Of a stretch of 64,000 bases of DNA, positions 49 through 56,211 are shown in pieces. Origin of the DNA: Ruditapes philippinarum (lineage: Eukaryota); contig NW_026852739.1 in the NCBI RefSeq assembly GCF_026571515.1, positions 310,001 through 374,000 of the forward strand. Direction: 5' to 3'. The translations under genes were made by a program, and so were the position numbers. The stretch's first letter is position 1. The number at the start of each line of letters is the position of its first letter. Under the pieces are notes generated by a model, which was not told where the DNA came from, ran no database searches, and saw nothing but the letters and a program-made list of their open reading frames with translations.

Positions 49-189
49 CTTTATTCTGGTCAGGGTCATGCCTTCTTTTCATCCGTAATGTAACGTATAT
101 GGAATATACCAACACGACAACTATCAGTATGCCGAGAACTACTCCTACTATTATCGCAGTGGTGTTGTTTGTCTTTACTGTCACATTCA
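49..189 (-). CDS. Gene A transmembrane exon
   Basis: VNVTVKTNNTTAIIVGVVLGILIVVVLVYSIYVTLRMKRRHDPDQNK; AG/GT boundaries, 141 nt, phase 1-1. Confidence 0.85.
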
Positions 190-53700: not shown

Positions 53701-56211
53701 CCAACTTTACCTGACTTTTAATCAGATATGCAGCTTCACACACATAGTTTGTACTTTCTGTTATTAAAATTAGACATATTCAGAAAGAATTACATGGCTT
53801 TCAATTAATTCCTGGGATAAAAATTATTTACTCTAAGATGAGCACAGTATATCTTTAAAGTTATTTTAAAATCAGAGTCAAATACAATGTCATGTAGTTA
53901 CTATAAACATGATGATTCATCATGGGTAATTCATGAAATATAATAAATCAATTTATGTTTTAAATGAAGATACATTTACGTTATTTTCTTTAGCTCAGTG
54001 TATCATTGTCTTATTGAGAGGATCGATAATGATACTGTCCCAGGATGATAACTTGAGCCTTTGTTTACATAATAAAGATTATTAACAATGCGAAAAATAT
54101 GTAAGGCAGATTGAAGCCTTATGAATAAAACACAAAGTTAAACGAGACATTTCCATGTGTCTTCATAGCGCAGTAGGCAGTACGTCCGTGTCTGTATTGT
54201 ATTCATTCATTTACATGTTCGAATCATAGTTAGATACAATTACATCTGAGAGTTTTCATATATCCTTTTCATTTTTCCAAATAGTGCGGGATAGAATGTT
54301 TTTGTACACAGGTTGGCATGCACTTGTGTAAAAAAAAATTGAAGATAATGTGAAAAGTGTTTATATTCATCCATATATATTAGAATTATTATTATTATTT
54401 CGTAACCGCAGTGTGTTAAAATAATTCGTTTTTCAAAATGAATTAAAAAAGAGACAAAAAGGAAGGAAAGAAATAAACACAACATCACTATAACATGGCA
54501 GTGCGTACGGTTCGAACCTACGAGTTCAAATCATTAAAAGTTACAGTAACGTTGATTTACCACCTGAGCCATCACGATGGTACACATTTTTCTTAAAATT
54601 AAACTATATATGGTTGTTGACACTATCAACCTCGGATAATATGCAGACTTACCCTTTTAATGGACTTTCCAATGTACCGTTAAGACCAAATTATCATCCT
54701 AGGACAATACCAATTATATTCTTCAAACTTGTGTTCGTGTTTGTTTTACCCCGCTAGTTTGTTTACACAAGAGTGGTCATTCAGTTCACCTTCCTGCTAG
54801 CAGCCGATTGGTTAGGATTTTTGTTAAAAAATCCCTACCACCACTTATTATCGCAATACATTTTAAACCGCGTTGTGATTCACTGTATATTTTCTGTCTC
54901 GAAATTGTCTGCTTTAGGCGATAATGGGATGTATCTCATTTTTAAATTAGAATTGTGTTTGTAAAATTGTGTACAGTTATAGTATATTTCAATGTTGCAT
55001 ATTCTTTAACTGAAAGTACCGCATTGAAGAATGTTTTATATTAATGTTTCAGTCATAGGTGCTGGATTCTGTTTGAAGTTTATTGACATTTTATCTAAGA
55101 TTGAATGTTATCATACTATTTTCTAGCAGCAGTAAGTCACATCAAGTTTGATGAGGTTAAAAAAGTCTCAAGTATCTATGAAATCACATAAACCATTGTG
55201 CTCAAATATGCCAGATAATTATGTAATCATGGCATGACTTTTGATGTGATGATTTTCTTCCCAAAAATTTGCTTTCATAGAAAAGGAAGTGTTCATCAAA
55301 GTAAATAATCGCTTACAGTGTACGTCTTAATGTAAATATCAACAAAACATATATGAGCCATGTCATGACAAAACAAACATAATGGGTTTGCGACCAGCAT
55401 GGATCCAGACTAGCCTGCGCATCTGCGCAGTCTGATCAGGATCCATGCTGTTCGCTTACAAACCCTACAAGTAGAGAAACTGATAGCGAACAGCATGGAT
55501 CCTGATCAGACTGCGCGGAGGCGCAGACTGGTCTGGATCAATGCTTGTCGCAAACCAACTTTGTTGAATTTGTCGTGACGCGGCTCATATAGCCTTTGTA
55601 CCTTAATAAGCTGCCCTACAATATAACGTGACAAAGGCTCGTTATGAAAAATGTATAGCTGTAATAGTACAGTGGCAATAATTGAGTTTATTTGAAATAC
55701 GATCATACTTTAAATGTTTAAACTTAATGCCTATATATGCTCACATGTTTACAGAGTCAATAAAATAATAAAATTTTAATTAAAAAAGTTAAGAATAAAT
55801 ATTATTGGACAAGTATTGCTCTGTATATTAAAGTGCTGTTGAAGCTAGTTTATGTAGTCTATTTAAGTGTCCGTTGTATTGTTAAATGATAGGTTAAATA
55901 TTGTCTTATTACAGTTTTGTACATTAACATGAATAATATAGATCTTATCTAGATTAAAAGATCGTAAACAAAAATAGAGATAATTGGTATATAAGGTATT
56001 TTAAGGTATTGTAAAGACGAAGGTATTGTAAAGACGAAACTACAGACTGTAGATCCAATATTTGCTCCTTATCTCTTGTCATCTATAATGTGAACGTATT
56101 CAAATTTAAATATATTGATGATTTTAAATCGATGCAATATAACGAAAAATTTAAAGACTACTTACCGAAATAAACAACTGTTAAACTTTTAATATATATC
56201 CTATTATACAT
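41702..56211 (-). CDS. Gene C: IgSF type-I membrane receptor (SP, V1, 6 further Ig, FN3, TM, Tyr-motif tail); frameshift in one Ig exon
   Basis: Exons 56166-56211, 52138-52440, 50838-51143, 49892-50207 (frameshifted), 48999-49304, 48278-48553, 47784-48077, 47152-47484, 46250-46558, 45703-45822, 44797-44830, 43621-43761, 43073-43140, 42564-42588, 42198-42265, 41702-41778. Confidence 0.85.
42198..42265 (-). CDS. Gene C ITIM exon
   Basis: GKVEYENLPKKTHTTDAFKTEIA; 68 nt. Confidence 0.8.
42564..42588 (-). CDS. Gene C 25-nt micro-exon
   Basis: VEKETTAD; CAG / GTAAGT boundaries. Confidence 0.7.
42807..43049. mobile_element. Palindromic MITE, about 240 bp (copy 1 of 3)
   Basis: atgagccacgccatgacaaaaccaacat..gcgaccagcatggatccagacc with an inverted right arm. 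Confidence 0.9.
43073..43140 (-). CDS. Gene C ITAM-like exon
   Basis: INLYEKLQRSNNSENPNAYDMIK; 68 nt. Confidence 0.8.
43335..43490 (-). mobile_element. Degenerate tRNA-derived SINE head
   Basis: Minus strand reads tggttaaagtattggactagt..gtgggtttaatccctg (box A/B-like). Confidence 0.4.
43621..43761 (-). CDS. Gene C cytoplasmic exon
   Basis: ..HEQGQQQCQQTEMNNYADNNIYEQTKV..NK; phase 2-2; an alternative in-frame acceptor 9 nt inside is possible. Confidence 0.7.
43999..44418. mobile_element. HINE/pearl-like element carrying about 2 copies of a ~155-bp satellite unit
   Basis: Subterminal inverted repeat tgtgtcgcct / aggcgacaca; units begin near 44071, 44226, 44382 and contain aaagggcaataactc. 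Confidence 0.7.
44797..44830 (-). CDS. Gene C 34-nt micro-exon
   Basis: DGIRTRLQTIL. Confidence 0.75.
45703..45822 (-). CDS. Gene C transmembrane exon
   Basis: SDSRSLSVGGIVGGTLSALVVIVLIVVLVVLFRRKTITK; 120 nt. Confidence 0.9.
46250..46558 (-). CDS. Gene C FN3 exon
   Basis: 309 nt; 89 of 103 aa identical to the gene B FN3 by manual count. Confidence 0.9.
46919..47117. mobile_element. Palindromic MITE (copy 2, internally deleted)
   Basis: Same arms as 42807-43049. Confidence 0.9.
47152..47484 (-). CDS. Gene C cysteine-less Ig-like exon
   Basis: FPIVTKF..DIGYFDIVLSNEVDS; 333 nt. Confidence 0.85.
47784..48077 (-). CDS. Gene C Ig exon
   Basis: ITCNAMGLP..W..HSGIYTCSASNG; 294 nt. Confidence 0.9.
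48278..48553 (-). CDS. Gene C I-set Ig exon
   Basis: EGNNSELMCVASSKPASTFKWYK..DAATYRCNANNG; 276 nt. Confidence 0.9.
48999..49304 (-). CDS. Gene C Ig (C2-type) exon
   Basis: LDCTSGSSNPISDITW..NDGDIVSCEAQN; 306 nt. Confidence 0.9.
49892..50207 (-). pseudogene. Gene C Ig exon with frameshift (homolog of 21425-21733)
   Basis: 316 nt, not a multiple of 3; LNCTTGSSNPASDIKWFNGS then TAG at 50065-50067; NNGVVRSQ..MNGNEISCSV continues in another frame. Confidence 0.8.
50838..51143 (-). CDS. Gene C Ig (C2-type) exon
   Basis: VNCTSTVSKPAANLRW..DDNGRSVLCIVSHPL; 306 nt. Confidence 0.9.
52138..52440 (-). CDS. Gene C N-terminal V-set Ig exon (V1)
   Basis: GDIATIPC..SWY..RLGW..LVMRNVSVADEGRYVC; 303 nt. 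Confidence 0.9.
55351..55590. mobile_element. Palindromic MITE (copy 3)
   Basis: atatgagcc..ggctcatat; same family as 42807-43049. Confidence 0.9.
56166..56211 (-). CDS. Gene C probable signal-peptide exon
   Basis: MYNRIYIKSLTVVYF then GTAAGT, phase 1; joins ALHQTSICLG. Confidence 0.6.

What the first reader, a model, noticed from the sequence alone, without database searches (positions are those of the whole stretch)
49..56211. Tandem cluster of diversified V-Ig/FN3 receptors with ITIM/ITAM-like tails: candidate invertebrate immune or allorecognition receptor complex
Seen: three co-oriented paralogs with V-set distal domains, different numbers of Ig domains, FN3, TM and (B, C) Tyr-motif tails, plus scattered pseudo-exons. 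Known: clustered Ig receptors with variable ectodomains and ITIM/ITAM tails characterise vertebrate Siglec/LILR/KIR families and the Hydractinia Alr family (V-set, I-set, FnIII-like, TM, ITAM/ITIM). Inference: this is a birth-and-death self/non-self or pathogen receptor cluster in a mollusc-like genome. Automated pipelines would probably call it only nephrin-like or hemicentin-like.
Basis: partly seen in the sequence, partly recalled or inferred. Interest (0 to 1): 0.85.

Follow-up and report, generated by a model that had tools for sequence, protein, structure and literature searches.

The report
Clam Ig receptor cluster, tyrosine-motif tails
This stretch of Manila clam DNA holds three neighbouring genes of a clam-specific family of cell-surface immunoglobulin-type receptors whose outer tips differ and whose inner tails carry conserved tyrosine signalling motifs; an immune role is plausible but untested.

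Summary
The minus strand carries three co-oriented genes (A 7510-49, B 35954-12663, C 52440-41702). They are built from phase-1 exons for a V-like distal Ig domain, CD80-like C2-set Ig domains, Ig3, a cysteine-less Ig-like domain, one FN3 and a TM. At least seven decayed pseudo-exons lie among them.

The genome is Ruditapes philippinarum. Gene C is RefSeq 'contactin-1-like', a 5'-truncated model.

The cluster continues outside the window, with a fourth gene 11-22 kb to the left. At least 16 close paralogs exist genome-wide. Some carry EGF repeats in place of Ig domains on the same FN3-TM-tail cassette.

Tails carry conserved paired tyrosines. The A type has YVNV plus a C-terminal YTEL-x10-YDAI. 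The B/C type has YEKL-x11-YDxI, VEYENL and IYENL. These are kept across paralogs (pN 0.05, pS 0.20) and in Mercenaria.

Evolution is mosaic. 3' exons are homogenised, distal exons are 3-20 times more diverged at silent sites, and FN3 trees cluster by species. dN/dS is below 1 everywhere.

The immune or allorecognition reading is plausible by analogy with oyster CgIgR and CgNCAM1.

The scan noted a similar cluster elsewhere in this genome (s1-803755).

Verdict: a new member of a known kind.

The parts
7211..7510 (-). Gene A, exon for distal V-like Ig domain D1 (phase 1-1)
   Evidence: Pfam Ig_3/I-set/V-set E 1e-6 to 6e-5. Splice sites. 54% identical to the D1 of Mercenaria P0155. AF2 model with V-type Foldseek neighbours.
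6099..6383 (-). Gene A, exon for second distal Ig domain D1b
   Evidence: Pfam I-set/Ig_3 weak. 56-70% identical to the D1b of B, Z and M. Acceptor and donor.
5277..5418 (-). Gene A, 'x' exon broken by an in-frame TAA (pseudo-exon, or usable only from an internal acceptor at 5354)
   Evidence: 66% identical to B's x exon with one stop; nucleotide comparison.
4121..4468 (-). Gene A, C2-set Ig exon (C2a)
   Evidence: PF08205 E 1.1e-12; splice sites.
2635..2940 (-). Gene A, C2-set Ig exon (C2b)
   Evidence: PF08205 E 6.4e-10; splice sites.
1970..2266 (-). Gene A, Ig3 exon
   Evidence: PF13927 E 7e-9; 61% identical to C's Ig3.
1459..1791 (-). Gene A, membrane-proximal cysteine-less Ig-like exon ('mp')
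   Evidence: Weak I-set match, E 0.03. Conserved in all paralogs and in Mercenaria.
901..1206 (-). Gene A, FN3 exon
   Evidence: PF00041 E 2.5e-9; splice sites.
49..189 (-). Gene A, transmembrane exon (type a). The last exon, with YVNV and the C-terminal YTEL-x10-YDAI, lies about 1.1-1.3 kb left of the window.
   Evidence: Hydrophobicity scan. ORF and tail. Splice context. Tail conserved in 8 paralogs.
35906..35954 (-). Gene B, signal-peptide exon (Met plus a hydrophobic run, phase-1 donor)
   Evidence: Conserved with the exon upstream of Z, K3 and M.
32853..33137 (-). Gene B, distal Ig domain D1b exon
   Evidence: Pfam Ig_3 E 1.5e-6, V-set E 4e-4. PDB best matches are NCAM1 and antibody light-chain V domains. 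Splice sites.
25606..25749 (-). Gene B, 47-residue 'x' exon with two Cys, no Pfam family
   Evidence: Intact in Z, K3 and M, with dN/dS 0.18-0.36.
24780..25127 (-). Gene B, C2a exon
   Evidence: PF08205 E 9.9e-11.
23718..24023 (-). Gene B, C2b exon
   Evidence: PF08205 E 1.1e-15; best PDB match is SYG-2, E 2.5e-11.
21425..21733 (-). Gene B, C2c exon
   Evidence: PF08205 E 9.3e-13.
19891..20201 (-). Gene B, decayed copy of the C2c exon (pseudo-exon)
   Evidence: 77% nucleotide identity to C's 48974-49311; 5-10 stops in every frame.
18198..18431 (-). Gene B, decayed Ig3 exon (pseudo-exon)
   Evidence: 33% identical to Ig3 with a stop; both Cys are lost.
16961..17293 (-). Gene B, mp exon
   Evidence: 72% identical to paralog N.
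16395..16703 (-). Gene B, FN3 exon, 91% nucleotide identity to C's
   Evidence: PF00041 E 2.9e-9; blastn.
15396..15515 (-). Gene B, TM exon (type b)
12663..14472 (-). Gene B, cytoplasmic tail in six small exons: 14472-14439; about 13973-13851 (LYEQT); 13563-13496 (YEKL-x11-YDTI); 13255-13231; 12992-12925 (VEYENL); 12736-12663 (IYENL, stop)
   Evidence: Translations. Micro-exons. Splice contexts. Homologous to the RefSeq-confirmed tail of C.
52138..52440 (-). Gene C, distal D1 exon (not in the RefSeq model)
   Evidence: Pfam ig E 0.008. 41-45% identical to A's D1 and to Mercenaria P0155. Splice sites.
50838..51143 (-). Gene C, C2b exon (not in the RefSeq model)
   Evidence: PF08205 E 1.7e-13.
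49860..50298 (-). Gene C, decayed C2c exon (stop plus frameshift). The RefSeq CDS starts at a Met in its second half (50042).
48999..49304 (-). Gene C, C2c exon
   Evidence: PF08205 E 1.1e-7.
48278..48553 (-). Gene C, I-set exon (only C has it in this window)
   Evidence: PF13927 E 7.5e-14, PF07679 E 4.7e-11; 61% identical to Mercenaria P0040.
47784..48077 (-). Gene C, Ig3 exon
   Evidence: PF13927 E 2e-9.
47152..47484 (-). Gene C, mp exon
46250..46558 (-). Gene C, FN3 exon
   Evidence: PF00041 E 1.8e-8.
45703..45822 (-). Gene C, TM exon (type b)
41702..44830 (-). Gene C, tail in six small exons: 44830-44797; 43761-43621 (IYEQT); 43140-43073 (YEKL-x11-YDMI); 42588-42564; 42265-42198 (VEYENL); 41778-41702 (IYENL, stop)
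   Evidence: Exact mapping of RefSeq P0171.
10958..11186 (-). Relic D1b pseudo-exon between genes A and B
   Evidence: tblastn E 5e-7, with stops.
38615..38766 (-). Relic x-type pseudo-exon between genes B and C
   Evidence: tblastn E 2e-4.
33182..33283 (-). Partial tandem duplicate of the 5' part of B's D1b exon

Best explanation
The window holds three members (A, B, C) of a tandem cluster of single-pass membrane receptors. They belong to a multigene family restricted, as far as these searches reach, to heterodont (imparidentian) bivalves.

Each protein joins a variable outer part to a conserved inner cassette. The outer part is a V-like distal Ig domain of type D1 or D1b, followed by two or three CD80-like C2-set domains and sometimes an I-set domain. 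The cassette is Ig3, a cysteine-less Ig-like domain, one FN3, the TM and a tyrosine-motif tail.

Shown here:
- the architecture and the phase-1 exon structure;
- family size and clustering;
- mosaic history, with homogenised 3' exons and much older distal exons;
- exon decay;
- reuse of the FN3-TM-tail cassette with EGF ectodomains;
- purifying selection on the paired tyrosines.

Inferred mechanism: the distal Ig domain binds a ligand on a particle or another cell. Receptors then cluster, and a Src-type kinase phosphorylates the paired YxxL/I tyrosines. A tandem-SH2 effector docks there, either a Syk-type kinase (if the pair acts as an ITAM) or an SHP/SHIP-type phosphatase (if each half acts as an ITIM). 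The YxN sites (YVNV, YENL) would recruit a Grb2-type adaptor.

The most likely setting is recognition by hemocytes, by analogy with oyster CgIgR and CgNCAM1. That step is analogy, not evidence.
For: Domains and exon phases.

Species and annotation:
- Contig lengths reported for RefSeq proteins equal those of C1226, C9245, C12482 and C15777.
- P0171 maps at 91-100% identity per exon (five of the seven exon matches at 96-100%) onto gene C.

Family size and clustering:
- 16 FN3 exons at E below 1e-20, including the query's own, and 19 weaker ones.
- Five copies lie on C1226, four on C15777 and two on C5322.
- About 8 D1 and 10 D1b exons genome-wide.

Modular architectures:
- type I: D1-C2a-C2b-Ig3-mp-FN3;
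- type II: SP-D1b-x-C2a-C2b-Ig3-mp-FN3;
- EGF_CA-FN3-TM-tail genes.

Mosaic history:
- K1 versus K2: dS 0.03 in FN3 and Ig3, but 0.72 in D1.
- B versus Z: dS 0.18-0.23 in C2a, C2b and x, but 0.61 in D1b.
- B versus C: FN3 86% amino-acid identity, while mp is 36%.
- The flanking gene Z is A-like in its 3' half and B-like in its 5' half.

FN3 tree: Ruditapes copies form clades that exclude all Mercenaria copies (SH-aLRT 97 and 99).

Tails:
- The A-type C-terminus is nearly invariant in 8 paralogs, with pN 0.053 against pS 0.20. It is present in Mercenaria and in the Ruditapes EGF-type proteins.
- The B/C-type motifs are shared with Mercenaria P0159, P0173 and P0040.
- Paralog N and Mya P0154 carry an ITIM plus ITSM pair.

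Precedent:
- Oyster CgIgR has 5 Ig, a TM and DYTEL-x8-YEKL, and binds Syk (PMC6994640).
- CgNCAM1 has 3 Ig, FN3, a TM and 2 ITIMs, and binds SHIP2 in haemocytes (PMC11841013).
Against: - No transcript, tissue or challenge data could be obtained.
- dN/dS is below 1 in all exons. The highest values in distal exons (0.67-0.82) involve copies that look like pseudogenes.
- The tyrosine spacing is 10-11 residues, longer than the canonical 6-8 of vertebrate ITAMs. Only the A type has the acidic residue at -3.
- YDxI and YxN motifs also occur in adhesion receptors such as nephrin.
- All three window genes carry a decayed exon.
- The RefSeq protein of C lacks a signal peptide. No protein of 403-1283 aa matching B's FN3-tail was found. 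No signal exon was found for A or C.
Confidence: 0.5

Rival explanations
1. The genes encode cell-cell adhesion or wiring molecules of the nephrin/Kirre, turtle (IgSF9) or NCAM kind. On this reading they expanded in clams for tissue organisation in nerve, gill or mantle epithelia, and the tail tyrosines serve adhesion signalling (Nck or Grb2 type) rather than immune signalling.
For: - The C2-set exons match SYG-2, the nematode nephrin, best among solved structures (E 2.5e-11). Nectins and CD276 come next.
- The layout of C2-set Ig domains, one FN3 and a TM is that of nephrin.
- YDxI resembles the YDxV sites of nephrin (my own knowledge), and YxN sites suit Grb2.
- Purifying selection acts on all domains.
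- Automatic names of relatives are all adhesion molecules.
Against: - A separate 'nephrin-like' protein (P0165, 952 aa) exists in the same genome. It is 25% identical to the Mercenaria family member P0155, and its FN3 is a long outgroup branch.
- No one-to-one orthologs exist between two venerid clams for FN3.
- The same cassette is joined to EGF ectodomains.
- One paralog has an ITIM plus ITSM pair.
Confidence: 0.28
2. The three window copies are mostly decaying by-products of duplication (pseudogenes or non-coding transcripts). Function resides in other, intact members of the family.
For: - Each gene holds at least one decayed exon.
- The RefSeq CDS of C begins inside a decayed exon and lacks a signal peptide and two upstream exons.
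- No protein of 403-1283 aa matching B's FN3-tail was found.
- Relic exons lie between the genes.
- Paralogs K4 and M have stops in several exons.
Against: - All other exons of A, B and C keep open frames, splice sites and dN/dS of 0.2-0.4.
- All exons are phase 1-1, so skipping a decayed exon keeps the frame.
- B has an intact signal exon and an intact six-exon tail.
Confidence: 0.15
3. The cluster is a polymorphic self/non-self (allorecognition) complex, comparable to Hydractinia Alr or the Botryllus receptors.
For: - Architecture analogous to Alr: V-like D1, further Ig domains, an FN3 fold, a TM and ITAM/ITIM motifs, in a gene cluster with duplications and exon shuffling (bioRxiv 10.1101/2022.03.04.482883).
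- The distal exons are the most diverged part.
- Differences among D1b copies cluster in three blocks.
Against: - No polymorphism data exist.
- Clams are solitary and have no known fusion or rejection behaviour (my own knowledge).
- The Ig domains are canonical in sequence, unlike those of Alr.
- There are only about 18 distal exons genome-wide.
- dN/dS is below 1.
Confidence: 0.07

Closest known systems
Oyster CgIgR (Crassostrea gigas; PMC6994640)
   Same: - Bivalve type-I membrane protein with five Ig domains, a TM and a tail.
- Its paired tyrosines start with YTEL, as in the A-type tail here.
- They fit the pattern D/E-x-x-Y-x-x-L/I, then x6-12, then Y-x-x-L/I that the paper uses.
- It was shown to bind bacteria, dimerise and recruit Syk in hemocytes.
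   Different: - CgIgR has no FN3.
- Its spacing is 8 residues, against 10-11 here.
- It is described as a single gene, not as a tandem family.
- No function has been shown for the clam genes.
Oyster CgNCAM1 and CgIgIT (PMC11841013; cited in PMC11999971)
   Same: - Ig domains plus one FN3, a TM and a tail with ITIMs.
- Both halves of the clam A-type motif (S-x-Y-x-x-L and S-x-Y-x-x-I), and VEYENL in B and C, fit the ITIM pattern.
- CgNCAM1 is hemocyte-expressed and recruits SHIP2.
   Different: - CgNCAM1 has three Ig domains only.
- Orthology was not tested.
- The clam family has several tail types and variable ectodomains.
Nephrin / SNS / SYG-2 (IRM family)
   Same: - CD80-like C2-set Ig domains followed by a single FN3 and a TM.
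- SYG-2 is the best solved-structure match of a C2 exon.
- The tail has tyrosine docking sites.
   Different: - 5-6 Ig-like domains here, against 8-9 (my own knowledge).
- A distinct 'nephrin-like' gene exists in the same genome, 25% identical to the Mercenaria family member P0155.
- The clam genes show species-specific tandem expansion instead of one conserved ortholog.
Hydractinia Alr family (bioRxiv 10.1101/2022.03.04.482883)
   Same: A clustered family with V-like D1, further Ig domains, an FN3-like fold, a TM, ITAM or ITIM in some tails, duplications, exon shuffling and pseudogenes.
   Different: - Alr Ig domains lack the Cys-Trp-Cys pin, while the clam domains keep it.
- No sequence link was tested.
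- Alr genes are proven allodeterminants, and nothing comparable is known in clams.
Draper / MEGF10 / Jedi engulfment receptors
   Same: The EGF-type members of the clam family join EGF repeats to a TM and an ITAM-like pair with long spacing. This is the Draper layout (from my own knowledge, not tested here).
   Different: - The clam proteins have an FN3 before the TM and calcium-binding EGF modules.
- No NPxY motif was seen.
- The resemblance is one of layout only.

Membership tests
Bivalve IgSF receptors with ITAM/ITIM tails (CgIgR, CgIgIT, CgNCAM1 kind) | Type-I membrane protein with extracellular Ig domains (with or without FN3) | tested here: met
   Pfam on every exon. TM exons. Signal exon of B.
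Bivalve IgSF receptors with ITAM/ITIM tails (CgIgR, CgIgIT, CgNCAM1 kind) | Cytoplasmic ITAM (YxxL/I, x6-12, YxxL/I) or ITIM ([SIVL]xYxx[ILV]) | tested here: met
   - A: YTEL-x10-YDAI, with E at -3.
- B and C: YEKL-x11-YDxI and VEYENL.
- Conserved in paralogs and in Mercenaria.
- Met as sequence motifs only.
Bivalve IgSF receptors with ITAM/ITIM tails (CgIgR, CgIgIT, CgNCAM1 kind) | Expression on hemocytes and response to microbes | not testable with these tools
Bivalve IgSF receptors with ITAM/ITIM tails (CgIgR, CgIgIT, CgNCAM1 kind) | Phosphotyrosine-dependent binding of Syk, SHP or SHIP | not testable with these tools
   Needs biochemistry.
Nephrin / SNS / SYG-2 | C2-set Ig domains, then one FN3, then a TM | tested here: met
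Nephrin / SNS / SYG-2 | Single conserved ortholog with 8-9 Ig domains | tested here: not met
   - 5-6 Ig-like domains here.
- At least 16 paralogs.
- A separate nephrin-like P0165, 25% identical to the Mercenaria family member P0155.
- Species-specific clades.
Contactin (the RefSeq name of gene C) | Six Ig, four FN3, GPI anchor | tested here: not met
   One FN3, a TM and a long tail. The contactin layout is from my own knowledge.
Hydractinia Alr | Ig domains with non-canonical sequence (no Cys-Trp-Cys pin) | tested here: not met
   D1 and D1b keep both Cys, the Trp and the D-x-G-x-Y-x-C motif.
Hydractinia Alr | Highly polymorphic alleles that determine fusion or rejection | not testable with these tools
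   No population data could be reached.
Vertebrate paired receptors (KIR, LILR, Siglec) | Activating forms pair with ITAM adaptors through a charged TM residue | tested here: not met
   The TM segments of A, B and C hold no charged residue, and the ITAM-like pair sits in the receptor's own tail.
Vertebrate paired receptors (KIR, LILR, Siglec) | Sequence homology of the ectodomain | tested here: inconclusive
   Sequence matches to solved structures are generic: NCAM, contactin, antibody V domains, SYG-2, nectin. Fold neighbours of D1 are CD80, 2B4, CD48 and CD58, at TM 0.4-0.5.

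The most novel reading that the evidence does not exclude
The cluster could be part of a germline-encoded paired recognition system of clam hemocytes. Members would share near-identical membrane-proximal and signalling cassettes but carry old, divergent V-like tips. Tails would be of activating type (ITAM-like plus Grb2 sites) or inhibitory type (the ITIM plus ITSM pair of paralog N). If the tips are also polymorphic between individuals, the system could discriminate self from non-self cells. 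That would bear on resistance to transmissible cancers of bivalves.
Probability: 0.08. Interest if true: 0.85.

Novelty: new member of a known kind. Interest (0 to 1): 0.45.

Why it matters
Ig receptors with ITAM or ITIM tails have been studied one gene at a time in oysters. This finding gives a whole clustered family in a farmed clam, with a defined exon map.

Three features stand out:
- A conserved signalling cassette (FN3, TM, paired tyrosines) is reused with Ig or EGF ectodomains.
- The cassette is kept uniform while the distal domains stay old and different.
- Several tail types exist, including one with an ITIM plus ITSM pair.

This yields concrete candidates for hemocyte recognition receptors in Ruditapes and Mercenaria, species hit by Perkinsus, Vibrio and QPX disease. 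It also corrects misleading automatic names such as contactin-, hemicentin- and fibrillin-like. Without expression or binding data it remains a well-described candidate, not a discovery of function.

Tried and rejected
Tools that gave nothing or were unavailable:
No RNA or population evidence was obtained and read laying was not used.

Searches with limited yield:
- The FN3-exon search of the representative library was swamped by multi-FN3 proteins. Only the single-stretch hits were useful.
- The two full-length protein searches were limited by the word filter and returned mainly Mercenaria and Ruditapes proteins.
- The search with C's FN3-to-tail part found only itself, Mercenaria P0159 and one weak, unrelated FN3 protein (E 2.7e-7). 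It found no protein for gene B.
- Literature searches found no paper on this clam family.

Models and gene-structure searches:
- The D1b model was too poor to use (pLDDT 53.5).
- The search for signal exons of A and C gave only implausible candidates inside a MITE or in low-complexity sequence.
- An apparent similarity of the DNA upstream of C's D1 to the Mercenaria signal peptide was set aside. All D1 exons start at a conserved acceptor, and AT-rich intron sequence translates to hydrophobic peptides.

Ideas rejected:
- That the frameshift in C's decayed exon is a homopolymer assembly error. There are several indels and a stop.
- That these genes are the clam nephrin, contactin or turtle orthologs (see the membership test).

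Spliced models were never joined. All searches, folds and trees used single exons by reference, or proteins that the tools returned.

The N runs at 59218-61513 were left untouched.

Full report
**What is there**

The window is AT-rich (about 31% G+C). All convincing coding stretches lie on the minus strand.

Pfam scans of each stop-free stretch, exon by exon, gave:
- generic Ig matches for the distal exons (Ig_3, I-set and V-set at E 1e-4 to 1e-6);
- CD80-like C2-set_2 for the middle exons (E 1e-10 to 1e-16);
- an I-set exon in gene C;
- one fn3 exon per gene.

One exon per gene, here called 'mp', has no significant family. It is a cysteine-less Ig-like domain conserved in all relatives.

Every Ig, FN3 and TM exon has an acceptor and donor in phase 1-1.

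Three genes result:
- A: 7510 down to 49, with its last exon about 1.1-1.3 kb left of the window.
- B: 35954 down to 12663.
- C: 52440 down to 41702.

Spliced models were not joined for any search, fold or tree. Exons were used singly by reference, and full-length comparisons used proteins that the tools returned.

**Whose genome, and what is annotated**

The FN3 exon of C was searched against the representative library. Cluster look-ups then pointed to heterodont bivalves: Mercenaria, Ruditapes, Mya and Dreissena.

Contig lengths reported for Ruditapes philippinarum RefSeq proteins equal those of this assembly:
- 516,267 = C1226;
- 102,547 = C9245;
- 84,364 = C12482;
- 70,554 = C15777.

RefSeq 'contactin-1-like' (P0171, 733 aa) maps at 91-100% identity per exon onto gene C. 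Five of the seven exon matches are at 96-100%. The genome is therefore the Manila clam.

That model confirms my exons from C2c to the stop, including two micro-exons of 34 and 25 bases in the tail. However, it starts at a Met inside the second half of a decayed exon. It therefore lacks a signal peptide and the D1 and C2b exons.

No protein of 403-1283 aa matching B's FN3-to-tail part was found.

**Extent of the family**

The FN3 exon has 16 copies at E below 1e-20, including the query's own, and 19 weaker matches in the 1.4-Gb genome. Five copies are on this contig, four on C15777 and two on C5322.

I fetched the flanks and other loci and mapped an exon library onto them. This showed:
- a fourth gene, Z, 11-22 kb left of the window;
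- 'type I' genes (D1-C2a-C2b-Ig3-mp-FN3-TM-tail, the layout of Mercenaria P0155);
- 'type II' genes (signal exon-D1b-x-C2a-C2b-Ig3-mp-FN3-TM-tail);
- genes in which calcium-binding EGF repeats replace all Ig domains in front of the same FN3-TM-tail (RefSeq 'fibrillin-2-like').

Gene by gene:
- Gene A carries both D1 and D1b, and a broken x exon.
- Gene B has lost Ig3 and has an extra C2c.
- Gene C has D1, lacks C2a and has an I-set exon.

D1-type exons number about 8 and D1b-type about 10 genome-wide. Relic exons lie within and between the genes.

**Evolution**

Pairwise Nei-Gojobori estimates per exon give dN/dS of 0.1-0.9, never above 1.

Silent divergence differs greatly between exons of the same gene pair:
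- K1 versus K2: 0.03 in FN3 and Ig3, 0.18-0.30 in mp, C2a and C2b, 0.72 in D1.
- B versus Z: 0.18-0.23 in x, C2a and C2b, 0.61 in D1b.
- B and C share an FN3 at 91% nucleotide identity next to an mp domain at 36% amino-acid identity.
- Z is A-like in its 3' half and B-like in its 5' half.

The FN3 tree puts eleven Ruditapes copies, the Ig and EGF types together, in one clade (SH-aLRT 97). B and C form another (SH-aLRT 99). All Mercenaria copies fall outside both. The mp tree interleaves the two species.

I read this as tandem duplication with exon shuffling, made easy by uniform phase 1. Gene conversion would keep the cassette uniform while the distal exons stay old. This reading is an inference from the dS pattern.

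The highest dN/dS values in distal exons (0.67-0.82) involve copies K4 and M, which have stops elsewhere. They may therefore reflect decay rather than positive selection.

**Distal domains**

D1 and D1b keep the canonical Cys, Trp, Arg, Leu and D-x-G-x-Y-x-C residues.

The D1 model (pLDDT 70.5) has nine strands. Its Foldseek neighbours are only V-type domains: CD80, 2B4, CD48, CD58, MPZL1, PD-L1 and nectin D1. TM-scores are 0.4-0.5, so 'V-like' is reasonable but soft.

The D1b model was unusable.

Differences among four D1b copies cluster in three blocks, around residues 27-30, 34-45 and 80-90. This is suggestive only.

**Tails**

The A type:
- The last exon starts with YVNV and ends with YTEL-x10-YDAI, close to the C-terminus.
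- This end is almost invariant in eight paralogs, with pooled pN 0.053 against pS 0.20.
- It recurs in Mercenaria and in the EGF-type proteins.
- Dreissena P0081 ends with YDSL-x9-YSEL.

The B/C type is built from six small exons that carry, in order:
- (L/I)YEQT;
- YEKL-x11-YDxI, on one exon;
- VEYENL;
- IYENL.

The same motifs occur in Mercenaria P0159, P0173 and P0040.

A third tail type, in paralog N and in Mya, has LIYADL followed by TEYVQV, an ITIM plus ITSM pair.

None of the TM segments has a charged residue.

**Comparison with what is known**

In oysters, CgIgR has five Ig domains, a TM and DYTEL-x8-YEKL. It binds bacteria, dimerises and recruits Syk (PMC6994640). CgNCAM1 has three Ig domains, FN3, a TM and two ITIMs. 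It is hemocyte-expressed and recruits SHIP2 (PMC11841013). CgIgIT is similar (cited in PMC11999971).

The clam family is of that kind. No paper describing it was found.

It is not the clam nephrin, although SYG-2 is the best solved relative of its C2 exons. It is not a contactin. It also differs from Hydractinia Alr, whose Ig domains lack the canonical pin.

**Limits**

- Expression and polymorphism could not be examined.
- The first exons of A and C are unknown.
- The N runs at 59218-61513 were left alone.

**Verdict**

It is a new member of a known kind, of moderate interest.

Noticed in passing
window 42801-43054, 46917-47115, 55342-55599: A palindromic element of about 250 bp (arms 80-86% complementary) occurs three times in the window, twice in introns of gene C. 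The genome search gave at least 2,852 first-look candidates, and the scored copies are 93-95% identical. It looks like a young, very abundant MITE.
   Followed up: partly
window 36919-37645: A 727-bp imperfect palindrome (77% self-complementary) lies between genes B and C. Its nature is unknown.
   Followed up: no
window 38153-38509: A tandem array of a 32-bp unit, 11.2 copies, 96% matches. It sits beside a relic x-type pseudo-exon (38766-38615).
   Followed up: no
window 44044-44394: A tandem repeat of a 156-bp unit, 2.3 copies, in an intron of gene C's tail.
   Followed up: no
window 59000-62000: Trinucleotide-type low-complexity DNA interrupted by four N runs (59218-59821, 60592-60923, 61087-61257, 61385-61513). 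It gives long spurious ORFs in all frames.
   Followed up: no
G000:C12482:34247-41583 (RefSeq P0170) and Mya P0154: A family member close to gene B in its mp domain (72%) has a different tail with LIYADL followed by TEYVQV. This is an ITIM plus ITSM pair like those of SIRP-alpha or PD-1, and it hints at activating and inhibitory forms within one family.
   Followed up: partly
G000:C9245:67778-78459, C1226:454740-462494, C5322:45901-57447: Genes with calcium-binding EGF repeats in place of Ig domains carry the same FN3-TM-tail cassette, with a C-terminal paired-tyrosine motif. Their FN3 exons nest inside the Ruditapes Ig-type clade.
   Followed up: partly
window 25606-25749 and homologs in Z, K3, M: The 47-residue 'x' exon (two Cys, no Pfam family) between D1b and C2a is under purifying selection (dN/dS 0.18-0.36). 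Its fold is unknown.
   Followed up: no
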